Shown piece by piece: positions 4,389-60,672 of a stretch of 64,000 nucleotides of DNA. Within the stretch, counting starts at the first letter, position 1; every line of letters starts with the position of its first letter. The position numbers were made by a program, and so were the translations under genes. The DNA lies in contig CM106585.1 in the NCBI GenBank assembly GCA_048013815.1, positions 4,650,001-4,714,000 of the forward strand, given 5' to 3'. The stretch is from Setoptus koraiensis. Taxonomy: Eukaryota; Animalia; Arthropoda. The notes below the pieces were generated by a model. It had not been told where the DNA came from, made no database searches, and saw only the letters and a list, made by a program, of their open reading frames with translations.

Positions 4389-5100
4389 GCGATGGGGTCA
4401 GAGTGACCTTTTGCTTGTTTGCGACTTCCACTTATTGTTGGCATCGCCGGTGTCGCCGGTGTCGCTGGCGTCGCCGGCAGAAATTGAATTTGCTCGGCAT
4501 CGCATGCATCCTCGCCGGGGTTTTCTCGCCCGATTCAATGATTGGAGCCATTGAATCGGATCGGATCGAGCGCGTCAGATGTCATTGGCAGCGCCAATGG
4601 GTCGCTTTCACTGCGATTAGCTGCAAACAATCCAGAGAAAACGCAAACGGTGCAAAGACAACGCAATCAGTGCAGAGACAAAGCAAACAAAGGGGGCGCG
4701 ACAGTCGCCACCTTGCAGCCGTTTAAACGATTCGCAACCACATTCGCATTGAATGTCGCACCTTGTTATTACATGAATAAATTGTTTATGTGCGTGCTCT
4801 CAAGCATGCAATTAGTGATTTGATGAGCCTGATTAACTGGCCGCAATGCGCCATATATCATGCACGCATATCATCAATTTTGCACAGGTAACCTGTCAAG
4901 CTGCATCAAGTCGATGATGTGCTATGAGTGGGTGCTCACCTGGTGTCACGTAACAGCTACCTGTGCCGCGCAGTGCATGACCAAGAGAGAGCGATAACAA
5001 ACTCTGACAAGCAGAGCCAGTTAACGCTGAAGTTGTGCGATGATTCGACAATTGTCATGATATAACAACAGCGAAAATCTCATGACATTCCAGCCACTCA

Positions 5101-17500: not shown

Positions 17501-17796
17501 GCTTTCTTGAACATTCGCTCTATGGAGTGTCTGTCCAGATGAATTTCTCCATCTGTAGTTAATTCTGAAAAGTCAGTCATTGTGGTTGTTGTGGTCCTCT
17601 GTCTGAGTTTACTTGATGGACTCTCCGGAAGAATGATAGAGGCCTCTAGAGCTCTGTTTAATTGGTCGCGTAGGACCGAATATTGTTTCCAACGAGCCTC
17701 TAAGTTAATCTTCCAATGGCTAAGACTACTCTGGGCCGATATCTCTTGGCTAATAAACATCAAGAGCAACAACAATAAAATTGTGAACAATGTCAT
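14599..17796 (-). CDS. Large secreted protein (~1065 aa, intronless), family uncertain
   Basis: The track ORF begins at a TTG. The first ATG (17796) gives MTLFTILLLLLLMFISQEISAQ, a typical signal peptide. 3.2 kb open frame with ordinary composition and recurring (I/V/L)NG(I/V/L/F) motifs. Confidence 0.85.
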   Translation of the reverse strand: MTLFTILLLLLLMFISQEISAQSSLSHWKINLEARWKQYSVLRDQLNRALEASIILPESPSSKLRQRTTTTTMTDFSELTTDGEIHLDRHSIERMFKKANNFIENIRHKVTELHRVADGVTEKIRKNHDSYIFKDRITTKVTSIKHFLQPVFITTVYSATNVQLGYIKNNTTSVTDIIQSVFGPQSWTDHVKYDRSGRWYFEGTKTFHNGVVFQRNLSSACCNRLEPFGDVNHLMRASINQTVANSVVVVRSKSHFHSLTTNQLENKIDSIMQSHETPHQFRIKNNQSRVTLKPDNLLFIRQNIEASRSQSLNLIIRNSPIVIYAAHSPSTFISINAKQLHLKQNHYLMKIGQHQKFQGTATSFGRINVYNHLDCQLVNNIYQFADFVKQSLVRIDKNAIIPKLSFQQQPHSEELEQPVINVYNQFKIDNLNGISIPRDVMTASQLSTFNTPITVKGRKRFIIDPLFNNIIVAGTTSNLILPQEILTVSQDDHSGDEAGESSSKIFFVNGVHLVSGMELSEETHFDTMGPIRQNVKAPGVILSRLINHTANLKGVISFPLTIGRLDFTNNLNHINNIAIQDMNNPWLASTIHHSGLKKFENLVEADHCHFSAVNYVKNWMEHLIPIRGASFPQIIHTTLVFSNLLPSHTTVNNLVVPAKGFEQQVVVDDTLELLDKVLSYAHDRRPSSSFRSLRFLERLEMKNPLHSKINGILVSDVVTVNSGAVIRGRVTLTRGMHTKWHVVANRIQSNYAIGQTDLVSFYRSRIAIHPWFDIVGGSNRVIALNQLVLDGSNVVDEIFTNNFNNQLFSPFIARILSKSRPQTIKSNFKFENYAIFESNVFTRDSRGLVNGFVFSHLKFSSITFEDGLNVTEIIAIPESRIICDRRLARSNFTGNGEQSKNIHKETVLYPDLMEGTLMKRGSFFMKGNLTSFNKLTVLGNVHVKLVNGLKLSQRYLLNSTARLSPYQRQLDKQVINNYIIFDNNLNVTGNIDLWTESPKKRPVSSWFDDGKLLHHRQYQSVTKRNETARDAWRDKGQSLRDIIEEDQEAEEEGDDLSGVWYSLKS

Positions 17797-18125
17797 TGTT
17801 TCGGGAGCTCGTTGTAGCCCCTTTGGCTCCAGTTTTATCGCCGGATAGAATAAATTGATCCACAACCACTACTATTAGCTGATAGTGTGTGTTTAAAAGT
17901 AGTAAATTTTTAATAAATTTAAAACCACTCGTTGTGGGTGAACAACGATACTGATGGTCTTGTATCAATCAATGCGATTGATATCGAAGGTGTATCCATA
18001 TCGTTCCAGTTGACCTGATGATAAACCTTCAAGTGATAATGAAACAAAAACAAAAACAGTAGTAACAACAACAATAACCAGTTTTTTGTTTTGTTTTTTT
18101 GTTTGTTAGACTATTTATTGAAGAA

Positions 18126-18757
18126 TTAGAATATATCGTCGTCGTATGAGACTAACTCCCTCTTTAGATCAAGATCTGGAGCTGGAACATTATTATCCTT
18201 TCTGCTTGCTATTGCAGACCATTTTTGTTCGACCTTTGTATCGCCCGACTTTTGAGTCGATACCAAGTTGGGTGCTCGAGATGGGGGTTTGAAGAGCCTA
18301 ACTGGCGATTTCTCCGCAGGTTTGTCAGAGGGTGAAGGGTTGCCGAAGGTGTCGGCGTTTGAAGGACCTGATAAGCGATCAGGAACTTTTCTTTTGAAAC
18401 CGGAGCCAACAGGCTTCCTCTCTGGTAGCTTTGATGATATTTGAGGCAACGCTCCGGATCTTTTTAATTTTTCAATCACTTTCTTTGCATCTATAGCGCC
18501 CACTTCGTTGGCAGACTTTTTCAATGTGAGGGTGGAGTGAACCACTGTGGGTTCAGGCTTGGCTGATTTCAATTGTATCAATGAAGCTCTCTAGAGGATG
18601 CGGAGTAAATGGAACAATTAGTCACTCAATCTGGTACAGTACAGAAAGCGGCTAGCCTTAGATTAGGTATACTGACCTTTCTTTTTAGTTTTTCATATTT
18701 TCTCCTGAGCGACGTCTCTTCGTCTGTCTCTTCTTTCGGGAAGCAAATGAAGACCAT
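18126..18757 (-). CDS. NELF-E: Negative elongation factor E, RRM-less (181 aa; exons 18757-18677 and 18590-18126)
   Basis: Spliced protein starts MVFICFPKEETDEETSLRRKYEKLKRK|RASLIQLKSAKPEP...KLKRSGALPQI...SGFKR, matching the NELF-E N-terminus as I recall it (fly MVYIHFP...EEEQMLQAKYQKLKKKK). It ends KWSAIASRK...KRELVSYDDDIF, like the conserved NELF-E tail. 86-nt phase-0 GTCAGT...CTCTAG intron with a GACTAAT branch-like site; AATAAA at 18114-18119. Confidence 0.88.
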
Positions 18758-19194
18758 TTTCGTTTGGGATTGGCGAAAATTTTTCTGCTGGCAACTAACC
18801 TCTTTGCCGTATCCAACTTTTGATCAACTTCTTCTAGAAAGAAATAATCATCCAGGAATTGTTTCTGGTCGAATTCGCCCAGCGATACGTATGGAATTCT
18901 GTTACGTTTGCCGTCACAATCAAAGGTATTTTTGTGTTGTTTGCAACACCCGACAGAGCAATAAAGCCGGCTACAGCCTGGACATTTGTATGGACTGTTC
19001 TCCGTTGAGCAGACACAACAGGGCTTGGTGAGTTGGGAATGGAATTTTTGCTCGACAGTGTCCTCTATTTGGCTGTCCTCCGAGTCGGCTATTTCTCCCT
19101 CCTCTAAATCCGAAGAATCGTCCGAGCAGTAATTGGACATCAAATTTTGCAGCCCGCTACTGGATGTGACAGGCGATTGGGGGATATTTTGCAT
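18685..19194 (-). CDS. ZNHIT6: Box C/D snoRNP assembly factor ZNHIT6/Bcd1-like, C-terminally short (169 aa)
   Basis: zf-HIT CCVCSTENSPYKCPGCSRLYCSVGCCKQHK followed by the Bcd1-type DCDGKRNRIPYVSLGEFDQKQFLDDYFFLEEV segment. Confidence 0.85.
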   Translation of the reverse strand: MQNIPQSPVTSSSGLQNLMSNYCSDDSSDLEEGEIADSEDSQIEDTVEQKFHSQLTKPCCVCSTENSPYKCPGCSRLYCSVGCCKQHKNTFDCDGKRNRIPYVSLGEFDQKQFLDDYFFLEEVDQKLDTAKRLVASRKIFANPKRKWSSFASRKKRQTKRRRSGENMKN

Positions 19195-19437
19195 GACAAT
19201 GAGGCTAATGAATTATCACATGTATCGTTTATGTTGTTGAAAAAGAGGGTTACAGGCCGGCAATTGCCATGATTGGCCGTGCGAGAAACAACATGGCTCG
19301 CATATGCTGCAATTGAATTTTGTGAATCTTGCGCAGATGCGCAGAGAGAATTTGCAAAAAGTTCGCCATGTCGTTACTCACACTGTGTGAGTGTGTAATG
19401 GCCAAACAAAAGTAAAAGCGCACGCCGTACAATCGCC

Positions 19438-44568: not shown

Positions 44569-45380
44569 TCAAAGATATTTTTTGGCCATAATTCGGTAGA
44601 ATCTTGCCCTCCTACTCTGCATAGCCTCAAACAAAATTTCTTCATTGTTGTTTTCGTTCAATTCCAATTGTCCAATCAACTGTATAAGACGACACTTACG
44701 TTCCAATTCGCCTCTTTTTGTATGAATATGTATAATGTATTCTAATAGTGTGATGTCCCATATACACTCATAGAGATCGTCACAGCAATCATTGCAAAAT
44801 CTTTCGTTCAATTGTTTGAACGCAACTCCATAATTCAAATTGCTAGTCATCTGATACAATACAACAGCTTGAGTATAACAACCTAGTTTGATACTACACT
44901 GTATCATCCTATTGATGACAGTTTCTTCTTCCGAATAGTTATTACTGAAATGTGTGAAATACTCAGTCATAATAATCAAAACCTCAACAAAGTTACCCAT
45001 TGCTTGAAAGTATTCTGCCCTAGACATATGTAACTCTCCCTTTATGGTTAATATGGTACAGTCATCTGGCTGATTGTTCATTTTCGGTTGAGAATCTAGA
45101 GTTAAAGCACGCAAAGGGGCCCGGGCGGCGTTTGTAGATAGAAACCGTTCATCTTTATCCTGAGAGGCCATTAATCCAAACATTTCTGTGGAACTATTAG
45201 TTGTCGCTGGCTTTATAAGTCTTATGTCTAGGTCAATCTCTGTATCATTTATATGGATTTCCTGATGTCCTTCATCCATATCTGATATCTCGCCCTCCTC
45301 GACATCGCCGATAGATTTTGGTTTCGTGCGAGATTGATTGAGAAAGGCCTCTATCCTTTGCTCTTCGTCCATTTCACTAC
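44569..45380 (-). CDS. INTS8: Integrator complex subunit 8, C-terminal portion (probably 5'-partial)
   Basis: VINRMIQCSIKLGCYTQAVVL, CIWDITLLEYIIHIHTKRGE and IGQLELNENNNEEI...RFYRIMAKKYL match the INTS8 C-terminus. The upstream part runs into the G-less tract. Confidence 0.9.
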
Positions 45381-48300
45381 AATCCCCCACCCACCCCCAC
45401 CCCCCCCCCCCACCCAAATTCAATACTATCCCATTCCTCCTCTCCCTTCCACTTTTAACACCACCCACATCACTCCCCCCCCCACAACATTCTCATACTC
45501 TTTTTCTCATCACACTCACATTCATCCTTCCACCTTACACCCACACCATCACATCTCAATCCCACTACCACCCCAAACACCCTCCCTCCCCACAACTAAC
45601 ACCTCCCATAAATTAAAATTCAACCTCAACCCTATCCCTTAAACAAAAACACCCGCTCCTTTCCCAAATCTATCATAGCCAACTATCACCCCTCCCCATC
45701 CCACTCTCATCCATTAACACCATACCCAACAACCCACCCTTCTCTTCAACCACATAACTTTCTCCACCAAAATCCATTTACCCAAATATCTTAAAATCTA
45801 CAACATCATATACAAACCCAAACTAACACCACAATTATCCTCCCATAACCACTTCATCACCCTAATACTACACCCCACTTAATAACACACCCTATAATAC
45901 AATACACCTCATCCACTCCAAATCCAACTTCTATCTAATCTAACCCAATACCTCCTCAAATCCCCATTCAATATATCTCACAAACATTATACACATTTCC
46001 CACCCACAACTCCACCACACCACAACACCCCCTCTTTCCATTCCCTACCTATAAATACAACACCATAATATCAATCCCCAATTCCCAATCCTCCCCCCCC
46101 ATCCTCCCAAAATAAATCTACACATCCCTCTATTTTTCCTCAAACCCTCCAACATTCCCCCACAAATCTCCCTCCCAACCAACACAAACCTAATTCCCTA
46201 CCATAAATCCACACAATATAAACTCCATTCACATTTTTCCTAAAATATTCCACTACATAAATCTCCAACAACACCAATCAACCCTCATACCTACACCCTC
46301 AACTAAACCCCCCAACAAAATCATAACCAACTCTCAATCCAATTACCCTCCCCTCTAACTCCACTTATCACATACCCATTTTCATCACATTCTCCTAACA
46401 AATCTCACACCATTATCACAACCTCAACCAATCCTATCCAAAAATCAATTCAATATTAAAACATTCAACCACTCCAAAATTACCACCCCCATTAACCACC
46501 AAATCCCACTTCACTCTTAACTCCTAAACACAACAATACCTTAACCTCCACCTTTTTTACATAATAAAAAAAACCCCCACCCCCCACATCCCATCCACCT
46601 CACATATTAATAAATTACTCCACACCCACCCCCCAACCCATAATAAACACACCCCCCTCCCAACCATAATCTACCCTCCCCCAATTCCCCCCATACACAT
46701 AAAAAACAAACAACATCAACAATCCACAAAAAACTAACCATCAATCTCATAAAATAATAATTCACTCCCATTTAATATTACTATCAAAAACAACCTCAAT
46801 CAAACTACAACATTCACACATAATACAAAATATTAAACTCTAACCTAGACCATCTAACATCAAACACCTCTCAACCAATTAAAAAATTTAAAACCATCAC
46901 CCCAACCATTAAATAATACTATTCCCCCTACAAAAACAACAAACAACCCTTACCATTCCAATATCTTTCAACCACAATTCCAACTCTCACATATTCCAAC
47001 CCCACCACTCCCCAAAAATAAACCAATCATATCATTTCTCTCATTCCAATTACTTCCATATACAATATAACATATAAACCCATTATCAAAAAATCTTACA
47101 ACACCAACAACATATAATGAACATATCTAGAGATTATAAAATTAAAAACCCACAATCCAACCAAACTTCTTAACATCAACTCACTCATCTAATCAAAATT
47201 TAATACAAACACAACAAAACTTCAAACAAATTTCAAACATACTCATAATTTACATCCATCTAACAAAAACTATCAACACAACAAAATCCATATTTCCCAC
47301 AAAAAAATATACCATCTATCTTAATATAAACCAAATCTCCCCACATATACACCCACCTATAATACAACTACAACAACCTCACACCCCTCATTTTCCCCCA
47401 ACTAAACATACCCTCATCTTCTATCCACCAACACATATAACACCATACAAAACACTTCTTTTTTAACCAAAACCACTATTATCTCACCCACACAAAAACC
47501 AACAATAATCCACAAAAATTCAACAACCCCCTCACTTCAACACAATACTAATAAACAACAAACAACCCCACACCTCATACACACAACTATCTAAACCTCC
47601 ATCATTTAATAATCATCTAACATACTCCTCATAACTACTAAATAAAAAAAACTAAAGAATACAATATCTTCAATAGAACAAATTATTCCTACAATTAAAT
47701 ATTAAATCACACCAAAAATCTAATCTACACATCCCCCCTTTCTATAAACTACTAATCAATTAAAAATTATTTCAAATCTAATCATAAGACCAGTAATAAA
47801 CCACAAAACAACTATTTACCCACCACCACCACCATATTAAATCCATTATAAACACTTCATCCACCTAACCTCATCTACTTCATCCCAAATTACCCACTCC
47901 CCTCATCAAACAACACTTCCCCATTCCAAAATCACTCTCCTCACTTAACACCCATTTACTAAAACTCAACACCACCTAAAACCCTTTATCCCCACTACCT
48001 CACCCACATCACTCTCCTCCTCTTTACCTAAATCCACTCAAAACCCCATATAAATCAAAAACACTTCAATCACCTCCCCTACCTCCACCCCCCCCCTACT
48101 CACATTCCCACATTTCTCCCCATCCTTTCACCAACCCCAACCACCAACTAAATAACCACCAACAACCAAAAACCCCTAATAAAAACAAAAATACAAATTC
48201 CCCTCATTCCCAACCCCACCACTATCTCCCAGATCAACAACTATACTGCCATACTACACACAAACAATCTCTTTCAATCATTAACACAAAAACTCAATAT

Positions 48301-51300: not shown

Positions 51301-54300
51301 CAATCAATCCTACAATCACTCACTACCCACAAAATAACCACATACCTACAATTACTCAAAACCAAAATTAATTCTCACACTTACCTCTCCTTCTTTCTAA
51401 CTCTCACTCCCTAACCACAAACAATCTCTTCCAACCACCCCCATCACAACTAATAATATTAAACACCTAACATACTTACACACATACACAAACACTCAAC
51501 TCACAAACCACAATCACACACCACATCCACTCCTCACACAAAATACATATCTCTCAATCAATCTCCTTCAACACAAAAAAACCCACACCCACCAAAATCA
51601 ACTAACACATCACCCCACCCACCACACAAAACACCCAATCAACACTCCTCAATCTATCTAAACTACACAATCACCTACACCCCACACAACCACACATCAC
51701 TTCCACCCCACACCCCCCACCCCCCCACCACAACCCCTCCCACAAACAACCAAACCCCCCACACCCCCAACCCCACAACACACCCCCCCACCCAACACCC
51801 ACCTACACCACCCAACAACCCCAACCACCCCCACATCCCACAAACACAACCACACCCCCCAAACCCACAACACTCCCCCCCAACACCCCACCCAAAACTC
51901 ACACAACCACACCCCCACCCCCACAACACCCACCACCCCACAACCACCCACCCAAACCACCCCCCACCTCACACCCACACCACCCCCCCACACACCATAA
52001 CACCACCCAAACACAAACCACCCACCACCCACAAACCACCCAACCCCCCACACCATCCCCCCTCACAACCACAACACCACCACCACATACATCCCCACCA
52101 CCCCACAACTCCACACCATACCCACCACACCCCACCCAAACATCCTACACCACACAACACCCCATCACCCCAATCCAACCTCACCCCCCCACACCCAACA
52201 ACAAACACCACACCATACACCCCAAACCCACAACACCCCCCACAAAATCACCACACCCCAACACCACACCAACACCACCACAACAAAAATCCAACACCAC
52301 ATCCCCACAAACACACCCAAACACAAATCCCCAAACACCAAACACCCACCCAACAACACCACCACACCCCCAACAAACCACCAACACCCCACACCCAACA
52401 ACCACCCCCACCAACCCACACCACAACACCACAACACCCAACAACACCACCAACACAAACCCACCCACCCAAACAACAAAACCAACAACACATCCAACAC
52501 CCCAACACACAACCCCAACACAAACACCACCCCACACCCACAAAAACCACCACAAAACCCACACCCCCACCCCAACACACAACCCCCCAAACACCCAACC
52601 CACACACAAACACCCAAACAAAACCACACACCACACCCAACCCCACAACCACCCCACCCACACAACAACCCCAAACCACCCCAAAACCCACACCAAACCC
52701 AACACCACAACACCACCACAAACAAACACCCACCACCCCCACAACCCACCCCCAAACCCACACAAACCACCAACACCCACCACACAAACACCCACCCCAA
52801 CACCACCCAACAAAACAACACAACACACACCCCACCACAACACCACCCAACCACCACAACCCCCCACAACCCACACCCACCACAACACAACACCACCACA
52901 CAAACCACAAACCCCCCACCCCACCCCAACAACACCACAACCCCCACACACCCCCACACCACAAACAACCCACCAACAACCCCCCCACCAACCACAACAC
53001 CAACACCCAACACCCCACAACACACCCCCAACCCCCACCACCACCCCACCACCACAACCACACACCACAAACCCCCACACAACACACCAAACCCCCCCCA
53101 CCCCACCACCCACCAACACCACACACACCACCCCACCCCCACAACCCCCCCACCACACCCAACCACACCCCACCAACACCCCCACCAACCACACAACACC
53201 CACACACCACACCCCCCACCCACCCCACACAACCCCACCACAACAACAAACACCACACCCCCAAACACCCACCACCACACCCACCAACCCCCACAACACC
53301 ACCAACACACACCAACCCCACACCCACAACACCACCCCCCAACACCCACCCCAACACCACCCACACACCCACCCCACCACAACACCCCAACACCCCACAC
53401 CACACAACCCACACCCCACAACACCCACCACCCCCCCAACACCACCACACCACAAACCACCCCCACCCACAACACCCCACCACAACCACCCCACCCACAC
53501 CACCAACACAACCACAACCCCCACCACAACACCCCACAACCCACCCACACCACACCCCCCACCACAACACCCACCACAACACCCAACACACACCCCCCAA
53601 CCACCCCCACAACCCCCCCCACCCCACCACAAACAACACACCACCCCCAACACCACCCACCCCCCACCCCCACCAACACCAACACCACCCACCCCCACAC
53701 CCCCACCCACCCCACACCCACCCCAACACCAACAACCCACACACCAACACCCCCCACAACCCCCCCAACCCCCCACCCCCCACCACCCCCACACAACACC
53801 CCACCACACACCACCACCAACCCCCACAACCCACACCCACACCCCACACCCCCACAAACCCCCCACCACCCACACCACCCACAAACACACCAACACCCCA
53901 CCCCACCACCCCACACCACCCCCACCCACCACACCACCACCCCCACACCACACACCACCCACAACCCCCAACACCCCCCCACCCACCCCACCACCACCCA
54001 CACACCCCACCCCACCAACACCAACACCACCAACACCACCCCACCACCACCACCCACACCCCACCAACACCCACCCCCAACAACACCACACACCACCACC
54101 ACCAAACACCCCCACACCAACCCACACCCCCCACCCCACACCCACCAACACCAACCCCCCACAACCCCACACACACCACCCCACCCCACCACACCCAACA
54201 CCACCCCCACACCACAACCCCCCAACACCACCCCACCACCACACCCACCCACCCCCCCACCACCCCCACCCCACCCCACCACAACACCCCAACCCCCACC

Positions 54301-57300
54301 ACACCACACCCCCAACCCCCCCACCCCCCCACCAAACACAACACCACCACACCACACCACCCACAACACCCACAACCCCACCCCCCAACACCCCCCCACA
54401 CCCCCCACCACAACCAACCACCCAACACACCCACACAACCCCCACACACCCCCACCCCACACAAACACCCACCACCCCCACAAACACCACACCACCCACA
54501 CCCCCACACCCACCCCCCCACCCCACCCCACCAACACCACCCACACCCCCACACCCACAACCCCACACCCCCACACCCCCCCACCACCACCCCCCAACAC
54601 CACCACAACCACCACCCCACACACCCCACCCCCCACAACCCCCACCACACAAACCACCCCACACACCCCACACACCCCACACACCACCACCCACCACAAC
54701 CCCCCCCACACCACCCACCCCCCCACACCCACCCAACACCACACAACCACCCCACACCCCCACACCCCCCCCACCCCCAACCACCACCAACAACACCACA
54801 CACCCCCCAACCCCACCACACCCCACCCCACCACCACAACACACCCACACCCCACCCCCCCAACCCACACCAACACCCCCACCCACCCACCCAACAACAC
54901 CCACAAACCACCCACCCCCCCACACCCCACCACCACCACCCCCCCCACCACCCCACACACCCACCAACACCCCCCAACACCACACCCACCACACCAACCC
55001 CCCCAACCCCCACCCCCACAACCACACACAACACCACCCACCCCCCAACACCCACCACCCACCCCCCCCAAACCCCCACACCCACCACCACACCCCACAC
55101 ACCCCCACCACACCCACCCCCCACCACCCCACACCACACCACCCACCCCCACCACCCCCCACCCACACCCCACACACCCCCCCACCACACCCAACCACCA
55201 CACCACCCACACCCCCCCACCCAACCCACCACCCACACCCCCCAACCAACCCCCACCCACACCCCACCCCCCCCCAACCCCACCCCACCCCCAACCCACC
55301 CACCACAACAACACCCCACCACACCACACAACCCCCCACCCCCCCACCCCCCACCACACCCACACCCACCAACCCCCACCACACCCACACCCCCCCACCC
55401 ACCCCCCCACCACCAACACCACCACACCCACACCCAACACCCCCACCCCACCCCCCACCCCCCACCACCCCCCCCCAACCACCCACACCCCACCCCCACA
55501 CCACCCCAACCACCCACCCCACAACACCACCCCCCCACCAACCCCCACCCACACAACCACCCCACAACACACCACCCCCCCACACCCCCCACCCCCCCAC
55601 CCCCCACACCACACCCACACCCACCCCACACCCACCCCCCCCCCACACCCCACCCCCACCCCCCCACCCCACCAACACCACCACCACAACCCCACCAACC
55701 CCACCCCCCCCACCCCCCCACCCCCCCCCACCCAACACCCCACCCCCACCCACCCCCCCCACCACCACCCAAACCACCACCCCCCCCCCCCCCACCCCCC
55801 CCAACCCCCCACACCACCACCCCCCACCCACCCCCACCACACCACCCCCACCCCCACACCACCCCCCCACCCAAACCACAACACCAACCACCCCCCAACC
55901 CCCCACCCCACCCCCCCACCCCACACCCACCCCCCACCCCACCACACCCCACCCCCCCCACCACCCAACACCCCCACACCCCCCCACCCCCCCCCACCCC
56001 CCCACCACCCCAACACCACCCACACCCCCACCACCAACCCCCCCACACACACCCACACCACCCCCCCACCCCCCCCCCACCCACCACCCCCACCACACAC
56101 ACACCCCCCACCCACACCCCCCCACCCACCAACCCACCACCCCACCCCCCCCCCACCACCCCCCCACCCACACCCCCCCCACCAACACCACCACACCACC
56201 ACCCACACCCCCACCCCCCCCACCCCCCCCACCCCCCACCACAACCACCACCCAACCCCCCACACCCCCCACCCCCCCCACACCCCCACCCACCCCCACC
56301 CACCACCCCCCACACACCACCCCACACCCCCACCCCCACCCACAACACCACACCACACCCACCCCACCAACCCCCCACCCCCCCCCCACCCCCCCCCCAC
56401 CCCACCACCCCCACCCCCCCACCCCCACCCCCACCCCCACCCCCCCACCCCCCCCCCCACCACCCACCCACCCCCCCCCCACCCCCACCCCCACCCCCCC
56501 CCCCCCCACCACCCCCACACCACCCCCACCCCCCCCCACACCACCCCACCCCCCCCACCCCAAACCACCCCCCCCACCCCCCACCCCCCCCCCACCCCCC
56601 CACCCACACCACACCCCCCCCACACCCCCCCACACCCCCACCCCAACACCCCACCCCCCCCACACCCCCCCCACCCCCACCCCCACCACCCCCCCACCCC
56701 ACCCCCACCCACCCCCCCCACCCCCCACACCCCACCACCCCACACCACCACACCCCCCCCACCCCACCACCCCACCACCACACCCCACCCCCCCCCCACC
56801 CCCACACACACCACCCCCCACCACACCCCCACCCCCCCACCACCCCCCCCACCCCACCCCCCACCACCCCCCCACCCACCCCCACCCCCCCACCCCCACC
56901 CCCCAACCCACCCCCCACCCCCCCCACACCCACCCCCCCCACCCCCCCACCCCCCCACCCCCACCACCCCCCCACCCACACCCCACCCCCCCCACCACCC
57001 CCCCACCCCCCCACCCCACCCCACCACCCCCACCCCCACACCCCACCCCCCCCCCACCACCCCCACACCCCCACCACACCACCCCACCCCCCCACACCCC
57101 CACCCCACACCCCCCCCCCACCACCACCCCCCACACCCACCCCACCCCCCCACCACCCCCCCACCACCCCCCACCCCCCCCACACCCCACCACCCCCCCA
57201 CCCACCCCCCCACCCACAACCACCCCCCCACCCCCCCCCCACCCCCCCCACCCCCCCACCACCACCCCACACCCCCCACCCCCCACCCCCACACCACCCC

Positions 57301-59085
57301 ACCACACCCCACCCCCCCACACCACCCCCCCCCACCCCCCCCCCACCCCCCCCCCACCACCCCCCCCCCACCCACCACCCCCCACCCCCCCCCCACCCCC
57401 CCACCACCCCACCCCCCCACCCCCACCCCCCCCCCACCCCCCACCCACACACACCCCCACCACCCCCACCCCCCCCCCCCCCACCCCCCCCACCACCCAC
57501 ACCACCCCCACCACCCACCCCCCCCCACCCCCCCACCCCCACCCACCACCCCACCCCCCCCACCCCCCCCACCCCACCACCCCCCCCACACCCCCCCCCC
57601 ACCACACCCCCCCCACCCACCCCCCACCCCCCCCCACCCCCACACCACCCCACCCCACCCCCCACCACCCCACCACCACCCCCCCACCCACCCCCCCCAC
57701 CCCCCCACCACCCCCCCCCACCCCCCCCACCCCACCACCCCCCCCACCACCCCCCCCCCACACCACCACCCCCCACCCCCCCACCCACCCCCCCCACCCC
57801 CACCACACCACCCCCCCACCCACCCCCACACCCCCCACCCCCCACCCCCCCCCCCCACCCCCCACCCCCCCACCCCCCCCACCCCCCCCCACCACCCGCC
57901 CACCCCCACACCCCCCCCCACCCCCCCACCCCCCCCACCCCCACCCAACACCACCCCCCCACCACCCACCCCCACCACCACCACCCCCCCACCCCCCCCA
58001 CCCCCCCACACCCCCCCCACCCCCCCACCCGCTGACCCCCCCCACCCCCCACCCCACCCCACCACCACACCCCCACCCCCCCCACCCACCCCCCCCCCAC
58101 ACCCCCACCACCCCCACACCCACCCCACCCAGCCCCCCCCCACCCACCACACACCCACCCCCACCCCCCCCACCCCACCCCCCCCCACCCCACCCCACAC
58201 CCCCACCCCCCCCACCCCCCCCCCACACCCCACACCCCCCCCCCACCACCCCCACACCCCCCACCCCCCACCCACCCCCCCCCCACCCACCCCCCCACCC
58301 CCCACCCCCCCACCCACCCCCCACCACCCCCCCCACCCCCCCCACCCCACCCACCCCACCCCCACCACCCCCCCACACCACCCCCCCCACCCCCCCCACC
58401 CCCCCCACCCACCCAAACACAACCCCACCCCCCCACCCCCCCCACCCCCCCACCCCCCCACACCCCCCCACCCACCCCCCACCCCCCACCCCCACCCCCA
58501 CCCCCCCCCCACGCCCCCCCCCCCCCCCCCACACACCACCCCCCCCCCACCCACACACACCCCCACCCACCCCCCCCCCACACCCCCCCCACCCCCCCCC
58601 CACCCCCCCCCCCCCCCCCACCACACCCCACCCCCCACACCCACCCCCCCCCACCCCCCCCCCACCACCCCACCACCCACCACCCCACCCCCCCCCCACC
58701 CCCCCCCCCCCCCCACCCCCCCCCACCCCCCCCCCACCCCCACCCCCCCCCCACCGCCCCCACAAACCACCCCCACCCACACACAACCCCCCACCCCTCC
58801 CCCCCCAACCCCCCCCCCCCCCCCCCCCCAAACCCCCACCCCCCCCCCCCACCCCCCCACCACCACCCCCACCCCCACCCCACCCCCCACCCCCCACCCC
58901 CCCCCACACCACCCCCCCACCCACCCCACACCCCCCCCCCCCCCCCCACCCCACCCCCACCCCCCCACACCCCCCCCACCACCCCCCCCCCACCCACCCC
59001 CACCCCCCCCCCACCCCCCCCACACCCCCCACACAAAAAACACCCCCACCACCCCCCCCCCACCCCCCCCCCACCCCCCCACCCC
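45381..59085. other. 13.7-kb aperiodic C/A-rich tract with a compositional gradient; probable sequencing/assembly artefact
   Basis: G almost disappears abruptly at about 45,380; T fades out by about 52,500; A then declines toward C-runs at the gap edge. There is no repeat unit and the tract cuts a conserved gene. Confidence 0.8.
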
Positions 59086-59585
59086 NNNNNNNNNNNNNNN
59101 NNNNNNNNNNNNNNNNNNNNNNNNNNNNNNNNNNNNNNNNNNNNNNNNNNNNNNNNNNNNNNNNNNNNNNNNNNNNNNNNNNNNNNNNNNNNNNNNNNNN
59201 NNNNNNNNNNNNNNNNNNNNNNNNNNNNNNNNNNNNNNNNNNNNNNNNNNNNNNNNNNNNNNNNNNNNNNNNNNNNNNNNNNNNNNNNNNNNNNNNNNNN
59301 NNNNNNNNNNNNNNNNNNNNNNNNNNNNNNNNNNNNNNNNNNNNNNNNNNNNNNNNNNNNNNNNNNNNNNNNNNNNNNNNNNNNNNNNNNNNNNNNNNNN
59401 NNNNNNNNNNNNNNNNNNNNNNNNNNNNNNNNNNNNNNNNNNNNNNNNNNNNNNNNNNNNNNNNNNNNNNNNNNNNNNNNNNNNNNNNNNNNNNNNNNNN
59501 NNNNNNNNNNNNNNNNNNNNNNNNNNNNNNNNNNNNNNNNNNNNNNNNNNNNNNNNNNNNNNNNNNNNNNNNNNNNNNNNNNNNN
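59086..59585. other. Assembly gap (500 N)
   Basis: Run of N. Confidence 1.
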
Positions 59586-59586
59586 C

Positions 59587-60672
59587 TCGCTCGACAATAG
59601 ATGGTTGTTAGATCATCAGCGCAGTGAGCCAGCGCATACGAGCGTAGATCACAGGCTGTTGCGTCATATAAATCGAGCTCGCCAGCGGTATGCGGCCGCG
59701 GCACCAACGGCGACAGCACCAACAGAATCGGGCAACTTGAGCCAACAGCAGCAACTGTCATGGGGACTGTCGTCGTCACTGTCACGAGTTGATAATATCG
59801 ACTCGGGCAACATCAGCGCCAGTGCTTTATGGCGTCACACTGGCCCCACACTACAATATCCGTGGGCCTGTCGCGCGTCGTCGGCGCTAGGCGACTACTA
59901 CGGCGCTTCCGACACTGACCGTTACCATACCGCCCGCTACAGCGGCCAGATGCAATATGCAAACAACAAATTCAATGACAACATTCGTTTGCAGCGCCAC
60001 TCACCTGAGCGATTCTCGTACTCCATCCCGTACAGCGACAACAACAGCGCCGGCAGCAACATCAGAGCAACAACGCTGCAGAAACAATTGAGCGCCGGTC
60101 ATCACCATCGTCACAATTACGATAATGGCGCCGACAATTGGCCAGCGCTCCTACGCCGCTCCTCCTGTGACGCAACCACCGAAATGCAGGCCATTCTTTG
60201 TCGCCGGGGCGCACGCTCAAATTCGCAACAGCTCCACGGGCATGGCCACAACATTGCCGGCAGCATTATCGGACACAACAACGCCAGTTACGACACTAAC
60301 GCCAGCTACGACAACAACGCCAGTTACGACAACGTCGGCCAGCAGCGGCGCCCCAATAGCAATAATTCCGACAAGCATGATAATAATAATTACCAGTCTA
60401 GATATCCGTCGCAAGCGGCAGCGCAACACGAAACGGCCGAATCAACTATTAGTCTTCCAAACAATATTTTAGTTTCTTCTTCTAATGATGCCAACAACAG
60501 AAACAGTGCAACTTTCAACACGCCGCGACAATTGTTAGATGCCTCGACTGGCCACAACGACAACAAATACAGCAGAACAACAAATAACGCGCAAACACTA
60601 TCGCTGTCTGACCAAATACAGCAGCAATTGAAATCATTTTCGGCCGCCGGCCAGTCGAATCCCGTTCGCAAG
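59587..60672 (+). CDS. Probable internal coding exon of an unidentified low-complexity (N/Q/S/H-rich) protein
   Basis: The frame is open from the gap edge for about 1.08 kb and ends at a good donor AAG|GTGAGC (60673). Beyond it the ORF turns into F/R-rich minisatellite translation. Confidence 0.55.

What the first reader, a model, noticed from the sequence alone, without database searches (positions are those of the whole stretch)
18114..19194. Same-strand, out-of-frame overlap of ZNHIT6/Bcd1 and NELF-E: candidate bicistronic unit
Seen: the NELF-E start codon (18757, strong context AAAATGG) lies inside the ZNHIT6 ORF. 73 nt (18685-18757) are read in two frames: WSSFASRKKRQTKRRRSGENMKN* and MVFICFPKEETDEETSLRRKYEKL. 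The ZNHIT6 stop falls 8 nt before the NELF-E intron donor, and I find no AATAAA after that stop until 18114-18119, downstream of NELF-E. The ORF track misses this exon. Known: ZNHIT6 assembles box C/D snoRNPs; NELF-E acts in Pol II promoter-proximal pausing. Inference: both proteins come from one mRNA (leaky scanning or termination-reinitiation), or NELF-E has a promoter buried in the ZNHIT6 coding sequence. A ZNHIT6 stop upstream of a spliced junction could also couple the two through NMD.
Basis: partly seen in the sequence, partly recalled or inferred. Interest (0 to 1): 0.82.

Follow-up and report, generated by a model that had tools for sequence, protein, structure and literature searches.

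The report
Overlapping BCD1 and NELF-E-like gene pair
In this mite genome a shortened snoRNP-assembly gene (BCD1/ZNHIT6) runs 73 bases into the start of the next gene (NELF-E-like) on the same strand, and related mites keep the same spacer-less layout, which points to one shared transcription unit, although no RNA data could be obtained to prove it.

Summary
A 169-aa zf-HIT ORF (18685-19194, minus strand) overlaps, out of frame and by 73 nt, exon 1 of a two-exon NELF-E-like gene. The only AATAAA lies after that gene.

It is not an assembly error or a pseudogene. An independent assembly of a related mite (L001) has the same 73-nt overlap. The zf-HIT ORF is under purifying selection (omega 0.22). 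It belongs to a clade of shortened BCD1/ZNHIT6 proteins (120-190 aa) that keep only the N-terminal module.

All five substitutions in the overlap are silent in the NELF-E frame and amino-acid-changing in the BCD1 frame.

In Fragariocoptes setiger the two genes are 4 nt apart. In eight loci of Aceria-like eriophyoid mites the short BCD1 sits -4 to +21 nt upstream of a different gene, brunelleschi/TRAPPC9. Other tandem gene pairs in these loci are 388-1146 nt apart. The only conserved promoter motif (E-box) lies upstream of BCD1.

This favours a dicistronic unit (about 0.45) over a promoter buried in the BCD1 coding sequence (about 0.38). No RNA evidence was obtained: the read-mapping call returned zero reads.

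This is a new member of a known kind, arthropod dicistronic or overlapping gene pairs. The scan's first readers noted four more such pairs in this genome; none was tested here.

The parts
19195..19260 (-). Presumed promoter and short 5' leader of the unit. It holds CATGTG (19222-19217), 28 nt upstream of the BCD1 ATG.
   Evidence: Inferred. A CATGTG lies at -31 in F. setiger, and a canonical E-box CACGTG lies at -40 to -106 in 7 of 7 Aceria-like loci. L001 has no such motif. The transcription start site was not determined.
18685..19194 (-). Coding sequence of the short BCD1/ZNHIT6 (169 aa). It consists of a disordered acidic N-terminus, a zf-HIT (residues 57-95), a long helix (110-141) carrying FDQKQFLDDYFFLEEV, and a basic disordered tail.
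   Evidence: zf-HIT 20.5 bits, below the Pfam cut-off of 24.7; the F. setiger orthologue scores 26.5; best PDB match is the Bcd1 zf-HIT, 2n94; the next-best families are named box C/D snoRNA protein 1; omega 0.22; structure model.
18685..18757 (-). 73-nt stretch read in two frames: BCD1 codons 146-169 plus stop, and NELF-E-like codons 1-24.
   Evidence: the 5 substitutions against L001 are all synonymous in the NELF-E frame and all non-synonymous in the BCD1 frame; the tail is predicted disordered (pLDDT about 50).
18677..18757 (-). NELF-E-like exon 1 (27 codons, phase 0), start context AAAATGG.
   Evidence: It encodes the identical peptide in L001. The F. setiger homologue has an intron at the same place.
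18591..18676 (-). 86-nt GT..AG intron of the NELF-E-like gene.
   Evidence: The donor GTCAGTATA and a CTAAT branch-like site are shared with L001. Splicing itself was not observed, because no reads were obtained.
18126..18590 (-). NELF-E-like exon 2 including the stop codon. The full product is 181 aa and has no RRM.
   Evidence: 82% identical to L001 and 44% to F. setiger. omega 0.10.
18114..18119 (-). AATAAA, the only canonical poly(A) signal downstream of both stop codons.
   Evidence: L001 has an AATAAA 33 nt after the NELF-E stop.

Best explanation
The two ORFs form one dicistronic transcription unit.

1. A promoter just upstream of 19194 drives a transcript that runs through the short BCD1 ORF and the NELF-E-like gene.
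2. The 86-nt intron is spliced out.
3. The transcript ends at the single AATAAA at 18119-18114.
4. BCD1 is translated from the first AUG, which has a sub-optimal context (GTCAUGC).
5. A fraction of scanning ribosomes bypass that AUG. They pass one weak in-frame AUG and two mini-ORFs of 4 and 5 codons, then start at the strong AAAAUGG of NELF-E.

**Shown:** the geometry, its conservation in relatives, purifying selection on both ORFs, the lack of any spacer or canonical poly(A) signal between them, and that the NELF-E frame dominates constraint in the overlap.

**Inferred:** the single transcript, the start site and the translation route.

**Evolutionary reading (inferred).** BCD1 lost its C-terminal domain and its own 3' end in the eriophyoid lineage and has since lived as a 5' cistron. 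In the window/L001 lineage a further deletion removed its old tail, stop codon and spacer. The ORF now ends in the purine-rich start of NELF-E, which happens to encode a basic tail.
For: 1. The layout is conserved. The 73-nt overlap is identical in L001. F. setiger has a 4-nt spacer.
2. In eight Aceria-like loci the short BCD1 lies -4, -4, -4, +2, +6, +11, +12 and +21 nt from the ATG of brunelleschi/TRAPPC9. Other tandem gene spacings in the same loci are 388-1146 nt. The published median CDS-to-CDS intergenic distance in Aculops lycopersici is 538 bp (PMC7738191).
3. There is no AATAAA between the BCD1 stop and the end of the downstream gene in the window, F. setiger, L002, L006 or L008.
4. 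The E-box CACGTG lies upstream of BCD1 in 7 of 7 Aceria-like loci. No conserved motif was found in the 150 nt upstream of the downstream ATG in six of these loci.
5. Both ORFs are under purifying selection.
6. There are few AUGs between the two starts: 3 in 437 nt, against a mean of 8.1 in control coding windows. The two out-of-frame AUGs open only 4- and 5-codon ORFs.
7. Dicistronic mRNAs are established in arthropods: 159 pairs in Drosophila (PMC4528330).
Against: - No RNA evidence exists. Read laying gave 0 reads in four RNA runs, which appear not to contain this organism (possibly because their species label is the host's). No RNA run was listed for a related locus.
- The AUG depletion does not exceed a synonymous-shuffle null. 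It is absent in F. setiger, which has 7 AUGs. Several Aceria-like loci have an out-of-frame AUG whose ORF runs past the downstream start.
- No single translation mechanism fits all species. Reinitiation geometry fits F. setiger and the Aceria-like loci but not this window.
- In Drosophila most dicistronic loci also produce monocistronic transcripts (PMC4528330).
- The 2.4-kb contigs that carry both ORFs look genomic, not transcript-derived.
Confidence: 0.45

Rival explanations
1. Nested transcription units. The NELF-E-like gene has its own start site and core promoter inside the BCD1 coding sequence, and NELF-E protein is made from that shorter mRNA. The BCD1 mRNA still reads through to the shared poly(A) site, so it carries the NELF-E ORF only passively.
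For: - In Drosophila 114 of 159 dicistronic loci also produce monocistronic transcripts (PMC4528330).
- The position of the BCD1 stop relative to the downstream ATG drifts freely between species, from -73 to +21 nt, as expected if translation is not coupled.
- F. setiger has 7 intervening AUGs, and several Aceria-like loci have blocking out-of-frame AUGs.
- Synonymous divergence in the BCD1 core is lower than in its N-terminus (dS 0.60 against 1.42). This could reflect an embedded DNA element, but the number of sites is small.
Against: - There is no conserved motif in the 150 nt upstream of the downstream ATG, while promoter motifs upstream of BCD1 are clearly conserved in the same species set.
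- The 60 nt before the NELF-E ATG are poorly conserved between the window and L001 and contain an indel (omega 0.51).
Confidence: 0.38
2. Two separate mRNAs with separate 3' ends. The BCD1 mRNA is cleaved at a non-canonical site soon after its stop, for example in the intron or at the ATTAAA at 18468. NELF-E is transcribed from an internal promoter.
For: An ATTAAA lies 216 nt after the BCD1 stop. L001 has an ATTAAA and an AATAAA inside exon 2.
Against: These signals are not conserved in position between the window, L001 and F. setiger, which has none. L002 and L006 have neither hexamer across about 1.7 kb of the downstream gene.
Confidence: 0.1
3. The zf-HIT ORF is a decaying remnant of ZNHIT6, or the overlap is an assembly or indel artefact, and only NELF-E is a functional gene here.
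For: The ORF lacks the C-terminal two thirds of canonical BCD1. The Pfam score is below the cut-off.
Against: - omega is 0.22 overall and 0.13 in the core at dS 0.67.
- The same length and stop codon occur in an independent assembly.
- There is a whole clade of equally short orthologues with invariant zinc ligands.
- Yeast carrying an endogenous BCD1 1-115 truncation was constructed and studied, and the N-terminal region is the one needed for Bcd1 function (PMC7994586).
Confidence: 0.04
4. A single fusion protein is made by -1 ribosomal frameshifting or by alternative splicing that joins BCD1 to NELF-E.
For: The NELF-E frame is -1 relative to BCD1, and the overlap is A-rich.
Against: There is no canonical X XXY YYZ slippery heptamer in the BCD1 frame within the overlap (read directly from the sequence). 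In F. setiger and the Aceria-like loci the ORFs are separated by a stop codon, have differing frame relations, and in the Aceria-like loci a different partner gene.
Confidence: 0.03

Closest known systems
Drosophila dicistronic gene pairs (for example stoned A/B and Adh/Adhr; 159 pairs in FlyBase release 6.04, PMC4528330)
   Same: It is an arthropod nuclear locus with two unrelated protein-coding ORFs in tandem on one strand. There is no trans-splicing signal, and the upstream ORF is small.
   Different: - Here the two coding sequences overlap out of frame by 73 nt instead of being separated.
- A spanning mRNA has not been shown.
- The pair is conserved across three eriophyoid genomes that differ widely in sequence (NELF-E-like identity down to 44%).
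- The upstream gene has a different downstream partner in the Aceria-like mites.
Polycistronic mRNAs of green algae (PMC7896298)
   Same: In both, small upstream ORFs are very closely spaced with the downstream ORF, and the ORFs are mostly out of frame. Translation of the downstream ORF there is attributed mainly to leaky scanning that depends on the upstream Kozak-like context. Here the upstream context is weaker than the downstream one (GTCATGC against AAAATGG).
   Different: It is an animal, not an alga. There is no Iso-Seq or proteomic proof. AUG depletion is only modest and is absent in one relative.
Overlapping and multigene transcripts in compacted eukaryotic genomes such as microsporidia and nucleomorphs (from my own knowledge; not checked in the paper library)
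   Same: Both involve a streamlined genome, loss of intergenic control regions, and transcripts that start or end inside neighbouring genes.
   Different: This window is not extremely compact: other gaps between genes are about 0.3-1.4 kb. The collapse of the spacer is specific to this pair and is conserved, so it is not a general consequence of gene crowding.
Canonical BCD1/ZNHIT6 (yeast Bcd1, human ZNHIT6, Oppia nitens XP_054164159.1 at 328 aa)
   Same: It has the zf-HIT followed by the conserved DYxFLE helix. The best PDB match is the Bcd1 zf-HIT, and profile hits from E = 1e-24 downwards are named box C/D snoRNA protein 1.
   Different: It lacks the whole C-terminal domain, which in yeast (residues 120-303) binds Rtt106 (PMC7994586). 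Its basic tail is partly encoded by the neighbour's first exon.

Membership tests
BCD1 / ZNHIT6 (box C/D snoRNA protein 1) | N-terminal zf-HIT with its Cys/His zinc ligands | tested here: met
   Pfam zf-HIT scores 20.5 bits in the window protein, below the cut-off of 24.7, and 26.5 bits in the F. setiger orthologue. The ligands are invariant in 17 sequences. The best PDB match is the Bcd1 zf-HIT 2n94, E = 1.7e-4.
BCD1 / ZNHIT6 (box C/D snoRNA protein 1) | Conserved region after the zinc finger (PYV...F...LxDYxFLE helix) that separates BCD1 from ZNHIT3/Hit1 and ZNHIT2 | tested here: met
   The profile search matches positions 27-120 in proteins of 250-500 aa. The ones looked up are named box C/D snoRNA protein 1 (Oppia nitens, Nilaparvata lugens, Sycon, Branchiostoma).
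BCD1 / ZNHIT6 (box C/D snoRNA protein 1) | C-terminal alpha/beta domain (Rtt106-binding region, yeast residues 120-303) | tested here: not met
   The protein ends 24 residues after the helix region. tblastn with the O. nitens C-terminal half finds nothing in the 64-kb window or in the related loci. This is therefore a truncated member. PMC7994586 describes a yeast strain whose endogenous BCD1 was cut to residues 1-115.
BCD1 / ZNHIT6 (box C/D snoRNA protein 1) | Function in box C/D snoRNP assembly | not testable with these tools
   This needs genetics or biochemistry.
NELF-E | N-terminal helical region that pairs with NELF-B (M-x-x-I-...EEE..L..K[FY].KLK+K) | tested here: inconclusive
   The Atlas feature search of the F. 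setiger orthologue returns 'negative elongation factor E' clusters at ranks 1 and 2. 83 of 100 hits share the family set of the top three rows, but the best score is 0.76, which counts only as a lead. The window's exon-2 product alone gives no NELF-E hit. HMMER against the PDB is negative. The resemblance to the human N- and C-termini comes from memory only.
NELF-E | C-terminal RRM that binds nascent RNA | tested here: not met
   There is no Pfam domain in the exon-2 product, and the full product is only 181 aa. The F. setiger orthologue is 127 aa.
[quoted passage not shown] | A processed mRNA that spans both coding sequences | not testable with these tools
   Read laying returned 0 reads in 4 RNA runs. 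No RNA run was listed for L011. No transcript-derived contig was found.
[quoted passage not shown] | No room for a promoter or terminator between the cistrons, and no canonical poly(A) signal between them | tested here: met
   The overlap is 73 nt, and no AATAAA occurs until 18119. Relatives have spacers of -73 to +21 nt.
[quoted passage not shown] | Both ORFs encode conserved proteins, and their adjacency is conserved | tested here: met
   omega is 0.22 and 0.10. The pair is present in the window, L001 and F. setiger.
Termination-reinitiation coupling (stop-start overlap type) | The restart AUG lies within a few nucleotides of the upstream stop | tested here: not met
   In the window and L001 the AUG lies 73 nt upstream of the stop. 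The feature is met in F. setiger (+4) and in the Aceria-like loci (-4 to +21).

The most novel reading that the evidence does not exclude
Across eriophyoid mites the truncated, essential snoRNP assembly factor BCD1 has no transcription unit of its own. It survives only as the 5' cistron of true dicistronic mRNAs, paired with NELF-E in one lineage and with brunelleschi/TRAPPC9 in another. It would be one visible case of a genome-wide, operon-like mode of expression without trans-splicing that arose during genome streamlining. The four other tight same-strand pairs noted in this genome would be further cases.
Probability: 0.3. Interest if true: 0.72.

Novelty: new member of a known kind. Interest (0 to 1): 0.5.

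Why it matters
If the pair is truly dicistronic, it would be a conserved case of two nuclear proteins made from one mRNA in a chelicerate. I found no report of dicistronic mRNAs in mites.

The case has three unusual features:
- the coding sequences overlap out of frame;
- the upstream gene is an essential ribosome-biogenesis factor reduced to its minimal module;
- the same upstream gene is coupled to different downstream partners in different mite lineages.

This would show how genome streamlining can delete promoters and terminators and force genes to share them. It would also give a natural system for studying leaky scanning or reinitiation in animals.

There is a practical consequence as well. 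Gene predictors miss or mis-model such pairs: the first NELF-E exon shows up only as a 43-aa ORF, and no separate Aceria tosichella BCD1 protein turned up in the protein search.

If instead a promoter is buried in the BCD1 coding sequence, the locus is a tidy example of dual-use coding DNA, but an ordinary one.

Tried and rejected
1. **RNA evidence.**
   - The single read-laying run on 17700-19435, with four poly(A)/oligo-dT RNA runs carrying the species label of X4, gave 0 reads. Those runs evidently do not contain this organism. Possibly the label is the mite's host plant.
   - A second run search with the related locus L011 listed no RNA run.
   - The exact-protein look-up of the 169-aa ORF found nothing.
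   - The NELF-E exon-2 search found no spliced, transcript-derived protein.
2. **Candidate transcript contigs.** The 2.4-kb Logan contigs L009 and L010 carry both ORFs. I had hoped they were full-length dicistronic transcripts, but they have no poly(A) tail and end in what look like neighbouring genes, so they look genomic.
3. **AUG depletion as a test for leaky scanning.** It is real against other coding windows. It is not significant against a synonymous-codon shuffle, and it is absent in F. setiger. It is suggestive only.
4. **NELF-E identity.** HMMER against the PDB (single sequence, profile, and exon 1 alone) and Pfam were all negative.
5. **Frameshift or fusion reading.** Rejected: there is no slippery site, and the frame relation is not conserved.
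6. **NMD coupling.** Rejected, on stop-to-junction distance and on lack of conservation.
7. **Splicing of BCD1 to a distant 3' exon.** Rejected: no BCD1 C-terminal domain was detected anywhere in the window.
8. **Literature.** Searches for mite or eriophyoid dicistronic or operon reports found none.
Full report
**1. Observation**

- The ORF 19194-18685 encodes 169 aa.
- The ATG at 18757 (context AAAATGG) lies inside it, in the +2 frame.
- 81 nt later a GT donor follows at 18676. The zf-HIT stop codon TAA (18687-18685) ends 8 nt before that donor.
- An 86-nt GT..AG intron (18676-18591) joins exon 1 in phase 0 to exon 2 (18590-18126). The product is 181 aa.
- The overlap is 73 nt.
- The only AATAAA after the first stop is at 18119-18114. 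One ATTAAA lies at 18468.

**2. Not an artefact and not a pseudogene**

A Logan contig from a related species (L001; 75% identity for the zf-HIT protein, 82% for exon 2 of the second gene) has the same 73-nt overlap, the same stop codon and the same intron position.

I compared the window with L001 by the Nei-Gojobori method.

| Region | omega | Note |
|---|---|---|
| zf-HIT ORF, whole | 0.22 | dS 0.67 |
| zf-HIT ORF, core | 0.13 | |
| NELF-E-like gene | 0.10 | |

Inside the overlap there are five substitutions. All five are synonymous in the NELF-E frame and non-synonymous in the zf-HIT frame. The downstream gene therefore sets the constraint, and the zf-HIT tail follows passively. The AlphaFold model agrees: the zf-HIT (residues 57-95) and a long helix (110-141) are confident, while the tail after residue 142 is disordered.

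**3. What the genes are**

*The upstream gene* is a truncated BCD1/ZNHIT6.
- The best solved-structure match of the family profile is the yeast Bcd1 zf-HIT (2n94), just ahead of ZNHIT3.
- An exhaustive profile search gives eight clusters of short proteins (120-190 aa) at E <= 1e-39. After a gap come proteins mostly of 250-500 aa, starting at E = 2e-24.
- The four of those longer hits that I looked up are all named box C/D snoRNA protein 1 or its equivalent (Oppia nitens 328 aa, Nilaparvata lugens 420 aa, Sycon, Branchiostoma).
- The short clade keeps the zinc finger and the FDQKQFLDDYFFLEEV helix and then ends in a basic tail.
- No C-terminal BCD1 domain was detected anywhere in the window.
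- In yeast the region 120-303 binds Rtt106. The N-terminal region is the one needed for Bcd1 function, and a strain with the endogenous gene cut to residues 1-115 was made (PMC7994586). A minimal BCD1 is therefore plausible.

*The downstream gene* is called NELF-E on weaker grounds.
- Its nearest named relative is a hypothetical protein of the eriophyoid mite Fragariocoptes setiger.
- The Atlas feature neighbours of that protein are 'negative elongation factor E' clusters of arthropods, but the best score of 0.76 counts only as a lead.
- Pfam and PDB HMMER searches are negative, and the protein has no RRM.
- I therefore write 'NELF-E-like'.

**4. Comparative anatomy, the main new evidence**

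*F. setiger* (L005, GCA_019968535.1). The short BCD1 ORF stops at 5017 and the conserved MVF... start of the NELF-E-like gene is at 5022, which leaves a 4-nt spacer. The annotated alternative ATG at 5001 would overlap by 17 nt. The intron sits at the same codon. L001 and F. setiger also share a divergent INTS8 gene upstream. In the window INTS8 is seen only as a C-terminal piece 26 kb away, so the flanks have rearranged while the pair stayed together.

*Aceria-like mites.* A second group of loci comprises L002, L003, L006, L008, L009, L010, L011 and L012. Their downstream protein is 64-75% identical to 'Protein brunelleschi' (TRAPPC9) of the eriophyid Aceria tosichella. In these loci the short BCD1 is followed on the same strand by brunelleschi instead. 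The distances from the BCD1 stop to the brunelleschi ATG are -4, -4, -4, +2, +6, +11, +12 and +21 nt.

*Comparison with normal spacing.* Other same-strand neighbours in these loci are 388-1146 nt apart. The published median CDS-to-CDS distance in Aculops lycopersici is 538 bp (PMC7738191). The window itself is not crowded.

The short BCD1 is thus always glued to the start of the next gene, whichever gene that is. The Aceria-like BCD1 proteins carry a 10-20-aa insertion inside the zinc finger. The window, L001, F. setiger and the oribatid outgroup all lack it. The brunelleschi arrangement is therefore probably the derived one. This is an inference.

**5. One transcript or a buried promoter?**

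*Points that lean towards one transcription unit:*
- There is no spacer and no canonical poly(A) signal between the cistrons in the window, F. setiger, L002, L006 and L008. Any BCD1 mRNA must therefore run far into, and most simply through, the downstream gene.
- The canonical E-box CACGTG lies 40-106 nt upstream of the BCD1 ATG in 7 of 7 Aceria-like loci that have enough upstream sequence. A CATGTG lies at -28 in the window and at -31 in F. setiger. In five aligned Aceria-like loci a block around the ATG (ATTGAAATCATGG) is also conserved.
- In contrast, the 150 nt upstream of the brunelleschi ATG show no conserved motif and many indels. The 60 nt before the NELF-E ATG are poorly conserved between the window and L001.
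- AUGs are scarce between the two starts. The window has 3 in 437 nt, against a mean of 8.1 in same-length control coding windows. One is in frame with a weak context (TTGATGT). The other two open ORFs of only 4 and 5 codons. The NELF-E AUG has the better context.
- Of the 15 homologues found, 13 have no Met after their likely start codon.

*Points against a clean dicistronic model:*
- The AUG scarcity is explained by amino-acid composition. It does not exceed a synonymous-shuffle null.
- F. setiger has 7 intervening AUGs, and five Aceria-like loci have an out-of-frame AUG whose ORF runs past the downstream start.
- The geometry that would suit termination-reinitiation in the relatives (-4 to +21 nt) is absent here (-73 nt). 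No single translation route fits all species.
- In Drosophila most dicistronic loci also make monocistronic mRNAs (PMC4528330).

*Weighing.* I put about 0.45 on a true dicistronic unit in which NELF-E is reached by leaky scanning. I put about 0.38 on a nested promoter with a shared 3' end. The rest is split among the minor rivals.

**6. RNA evidence was not obtainable**

That run holds 74% of the sampled words of the stretch.
- All four returned zero reads. The label is most likely the mite's host, so the result is no test.
- A second run search with a related locus listed no RNA run.
- No transcript-derived contig or spliced protein was found.

**7.

- *NMD coupling.* The stop is only 8 nt upstream of the junction, which by the usual rule would not trigger exon-junction-dependent NMD (general knowledge). 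In F. setiger the stop lies about 85 nt upstream of the junction. The relation is not conserved.
- *Frameshift fusion.* I find no slippery heptamer in the overlap, and the frame relation varies among species.

**8. Likely history (inferred)**

- BCD1 lost its C-terminal domain before the split of the two eriophyoid groups sampled here.
- Since then it has sat directly in front of another gene.
- In the window/L001 lineage a further deletion of roughly 100 nt removed the ancestral basic tail, the stop codon and the spacer. To see this, compare the tail of about 45 aa in F. setiger with the 15 aa before the overlap here.
- The ORF now ends in the purine-rich 5' coding region of NELF-E. Read out of frame, that region again encodes a basic tail (RKKRQTKRRR).

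**9. Comparison with known systems and verdict**

Dicistronic mRNAs are well documented in Drosophila (159 pairs, PMC4528330) and in green algae (PMC7896298). Overlapping transcripts are known from compacted eukaryotic genomes (my own knowledge). The locus is best filed as a new, unusually well conserved member of that kind, and its expression mode is still unproven.

The scan's first readers noted four more tight same-strand pairs in this genome. I did not test them, but they suggest the phenomenon may be recurrent here.

Interest is moderate. The layout is real, conserved and easy to test once mite RNA data are mapped.

Noticed in passing
L001:4286-4374 and L001:4987-5075; window 19120-19194: An 89-nt inverted repeat (78% complementary) makes the divergently transcribed INTS8 and short BCD1 genes of L001 share their first 25 or so codons (MQN..SS.GLQ.LMSN.CSD). 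The window's BCD1 has the same N-terminus. F. setiger INTS8 and BCD1 both lack it. It looks like an inverted duplication across a bidirectional promoter.
   Followed up: partly
window 44569-45468 (-): INTS8 is detectable in the window only as its C-terminal 267 aa, 88% identical to L001. No N-terminal half was found anywhere in the 64 kb. It lies 26 kb from BCD1, whereas in L001 and F. setiger INTS8 is the divergent neighbour of BCD1.
   Followed up: partly
L002, L003, L006, L008, L009, L011, L012 (40-106 nt upstream of the short BCD1 ATG): A canonical E-box CACGTG is present in all seven Aceria-like loci that have enough upstream sequence. About 0.02 per locus would be expected by chance (my own estimate from base composition). 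It fits a Myc/USF-type control of a ribosome-biogenesis gene.
   Followed up: partly
L003:1403-3121 and equivalents in the other Aceria-like loci: The eriophyoid brunelleschi/TRAPPC9 is only about 550-590 aa and matches only positions 472-889 of the 1229-position Pfam model. The N-terminal half of TRAPPC9 is missing or encoded elsewhere.
   Followed up: no
window 18126-18757 (-): The NELF-E-like protein (181 aa) has no RRM and no RD repeats. The F. setiger orthologue is 127 aa.
   Followed up: partly
window 52165-59785 (-) and 59086-59585: Three ORFs of more than 2300 aa occupy all three minus-strand frames over the same 7 kb, which suggests a stop-free repetitive region. It lies next to a 500-N assembly gap.
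   Followed up: no
L003:3358-4032 (-): A HEXIM gene lies convergent, immediately after brunelleschi, in an Aceria-like locus. It is another Pol II pausing and elongation regulator close to BCD1, and this is probably coincidence.
   Followed up: no
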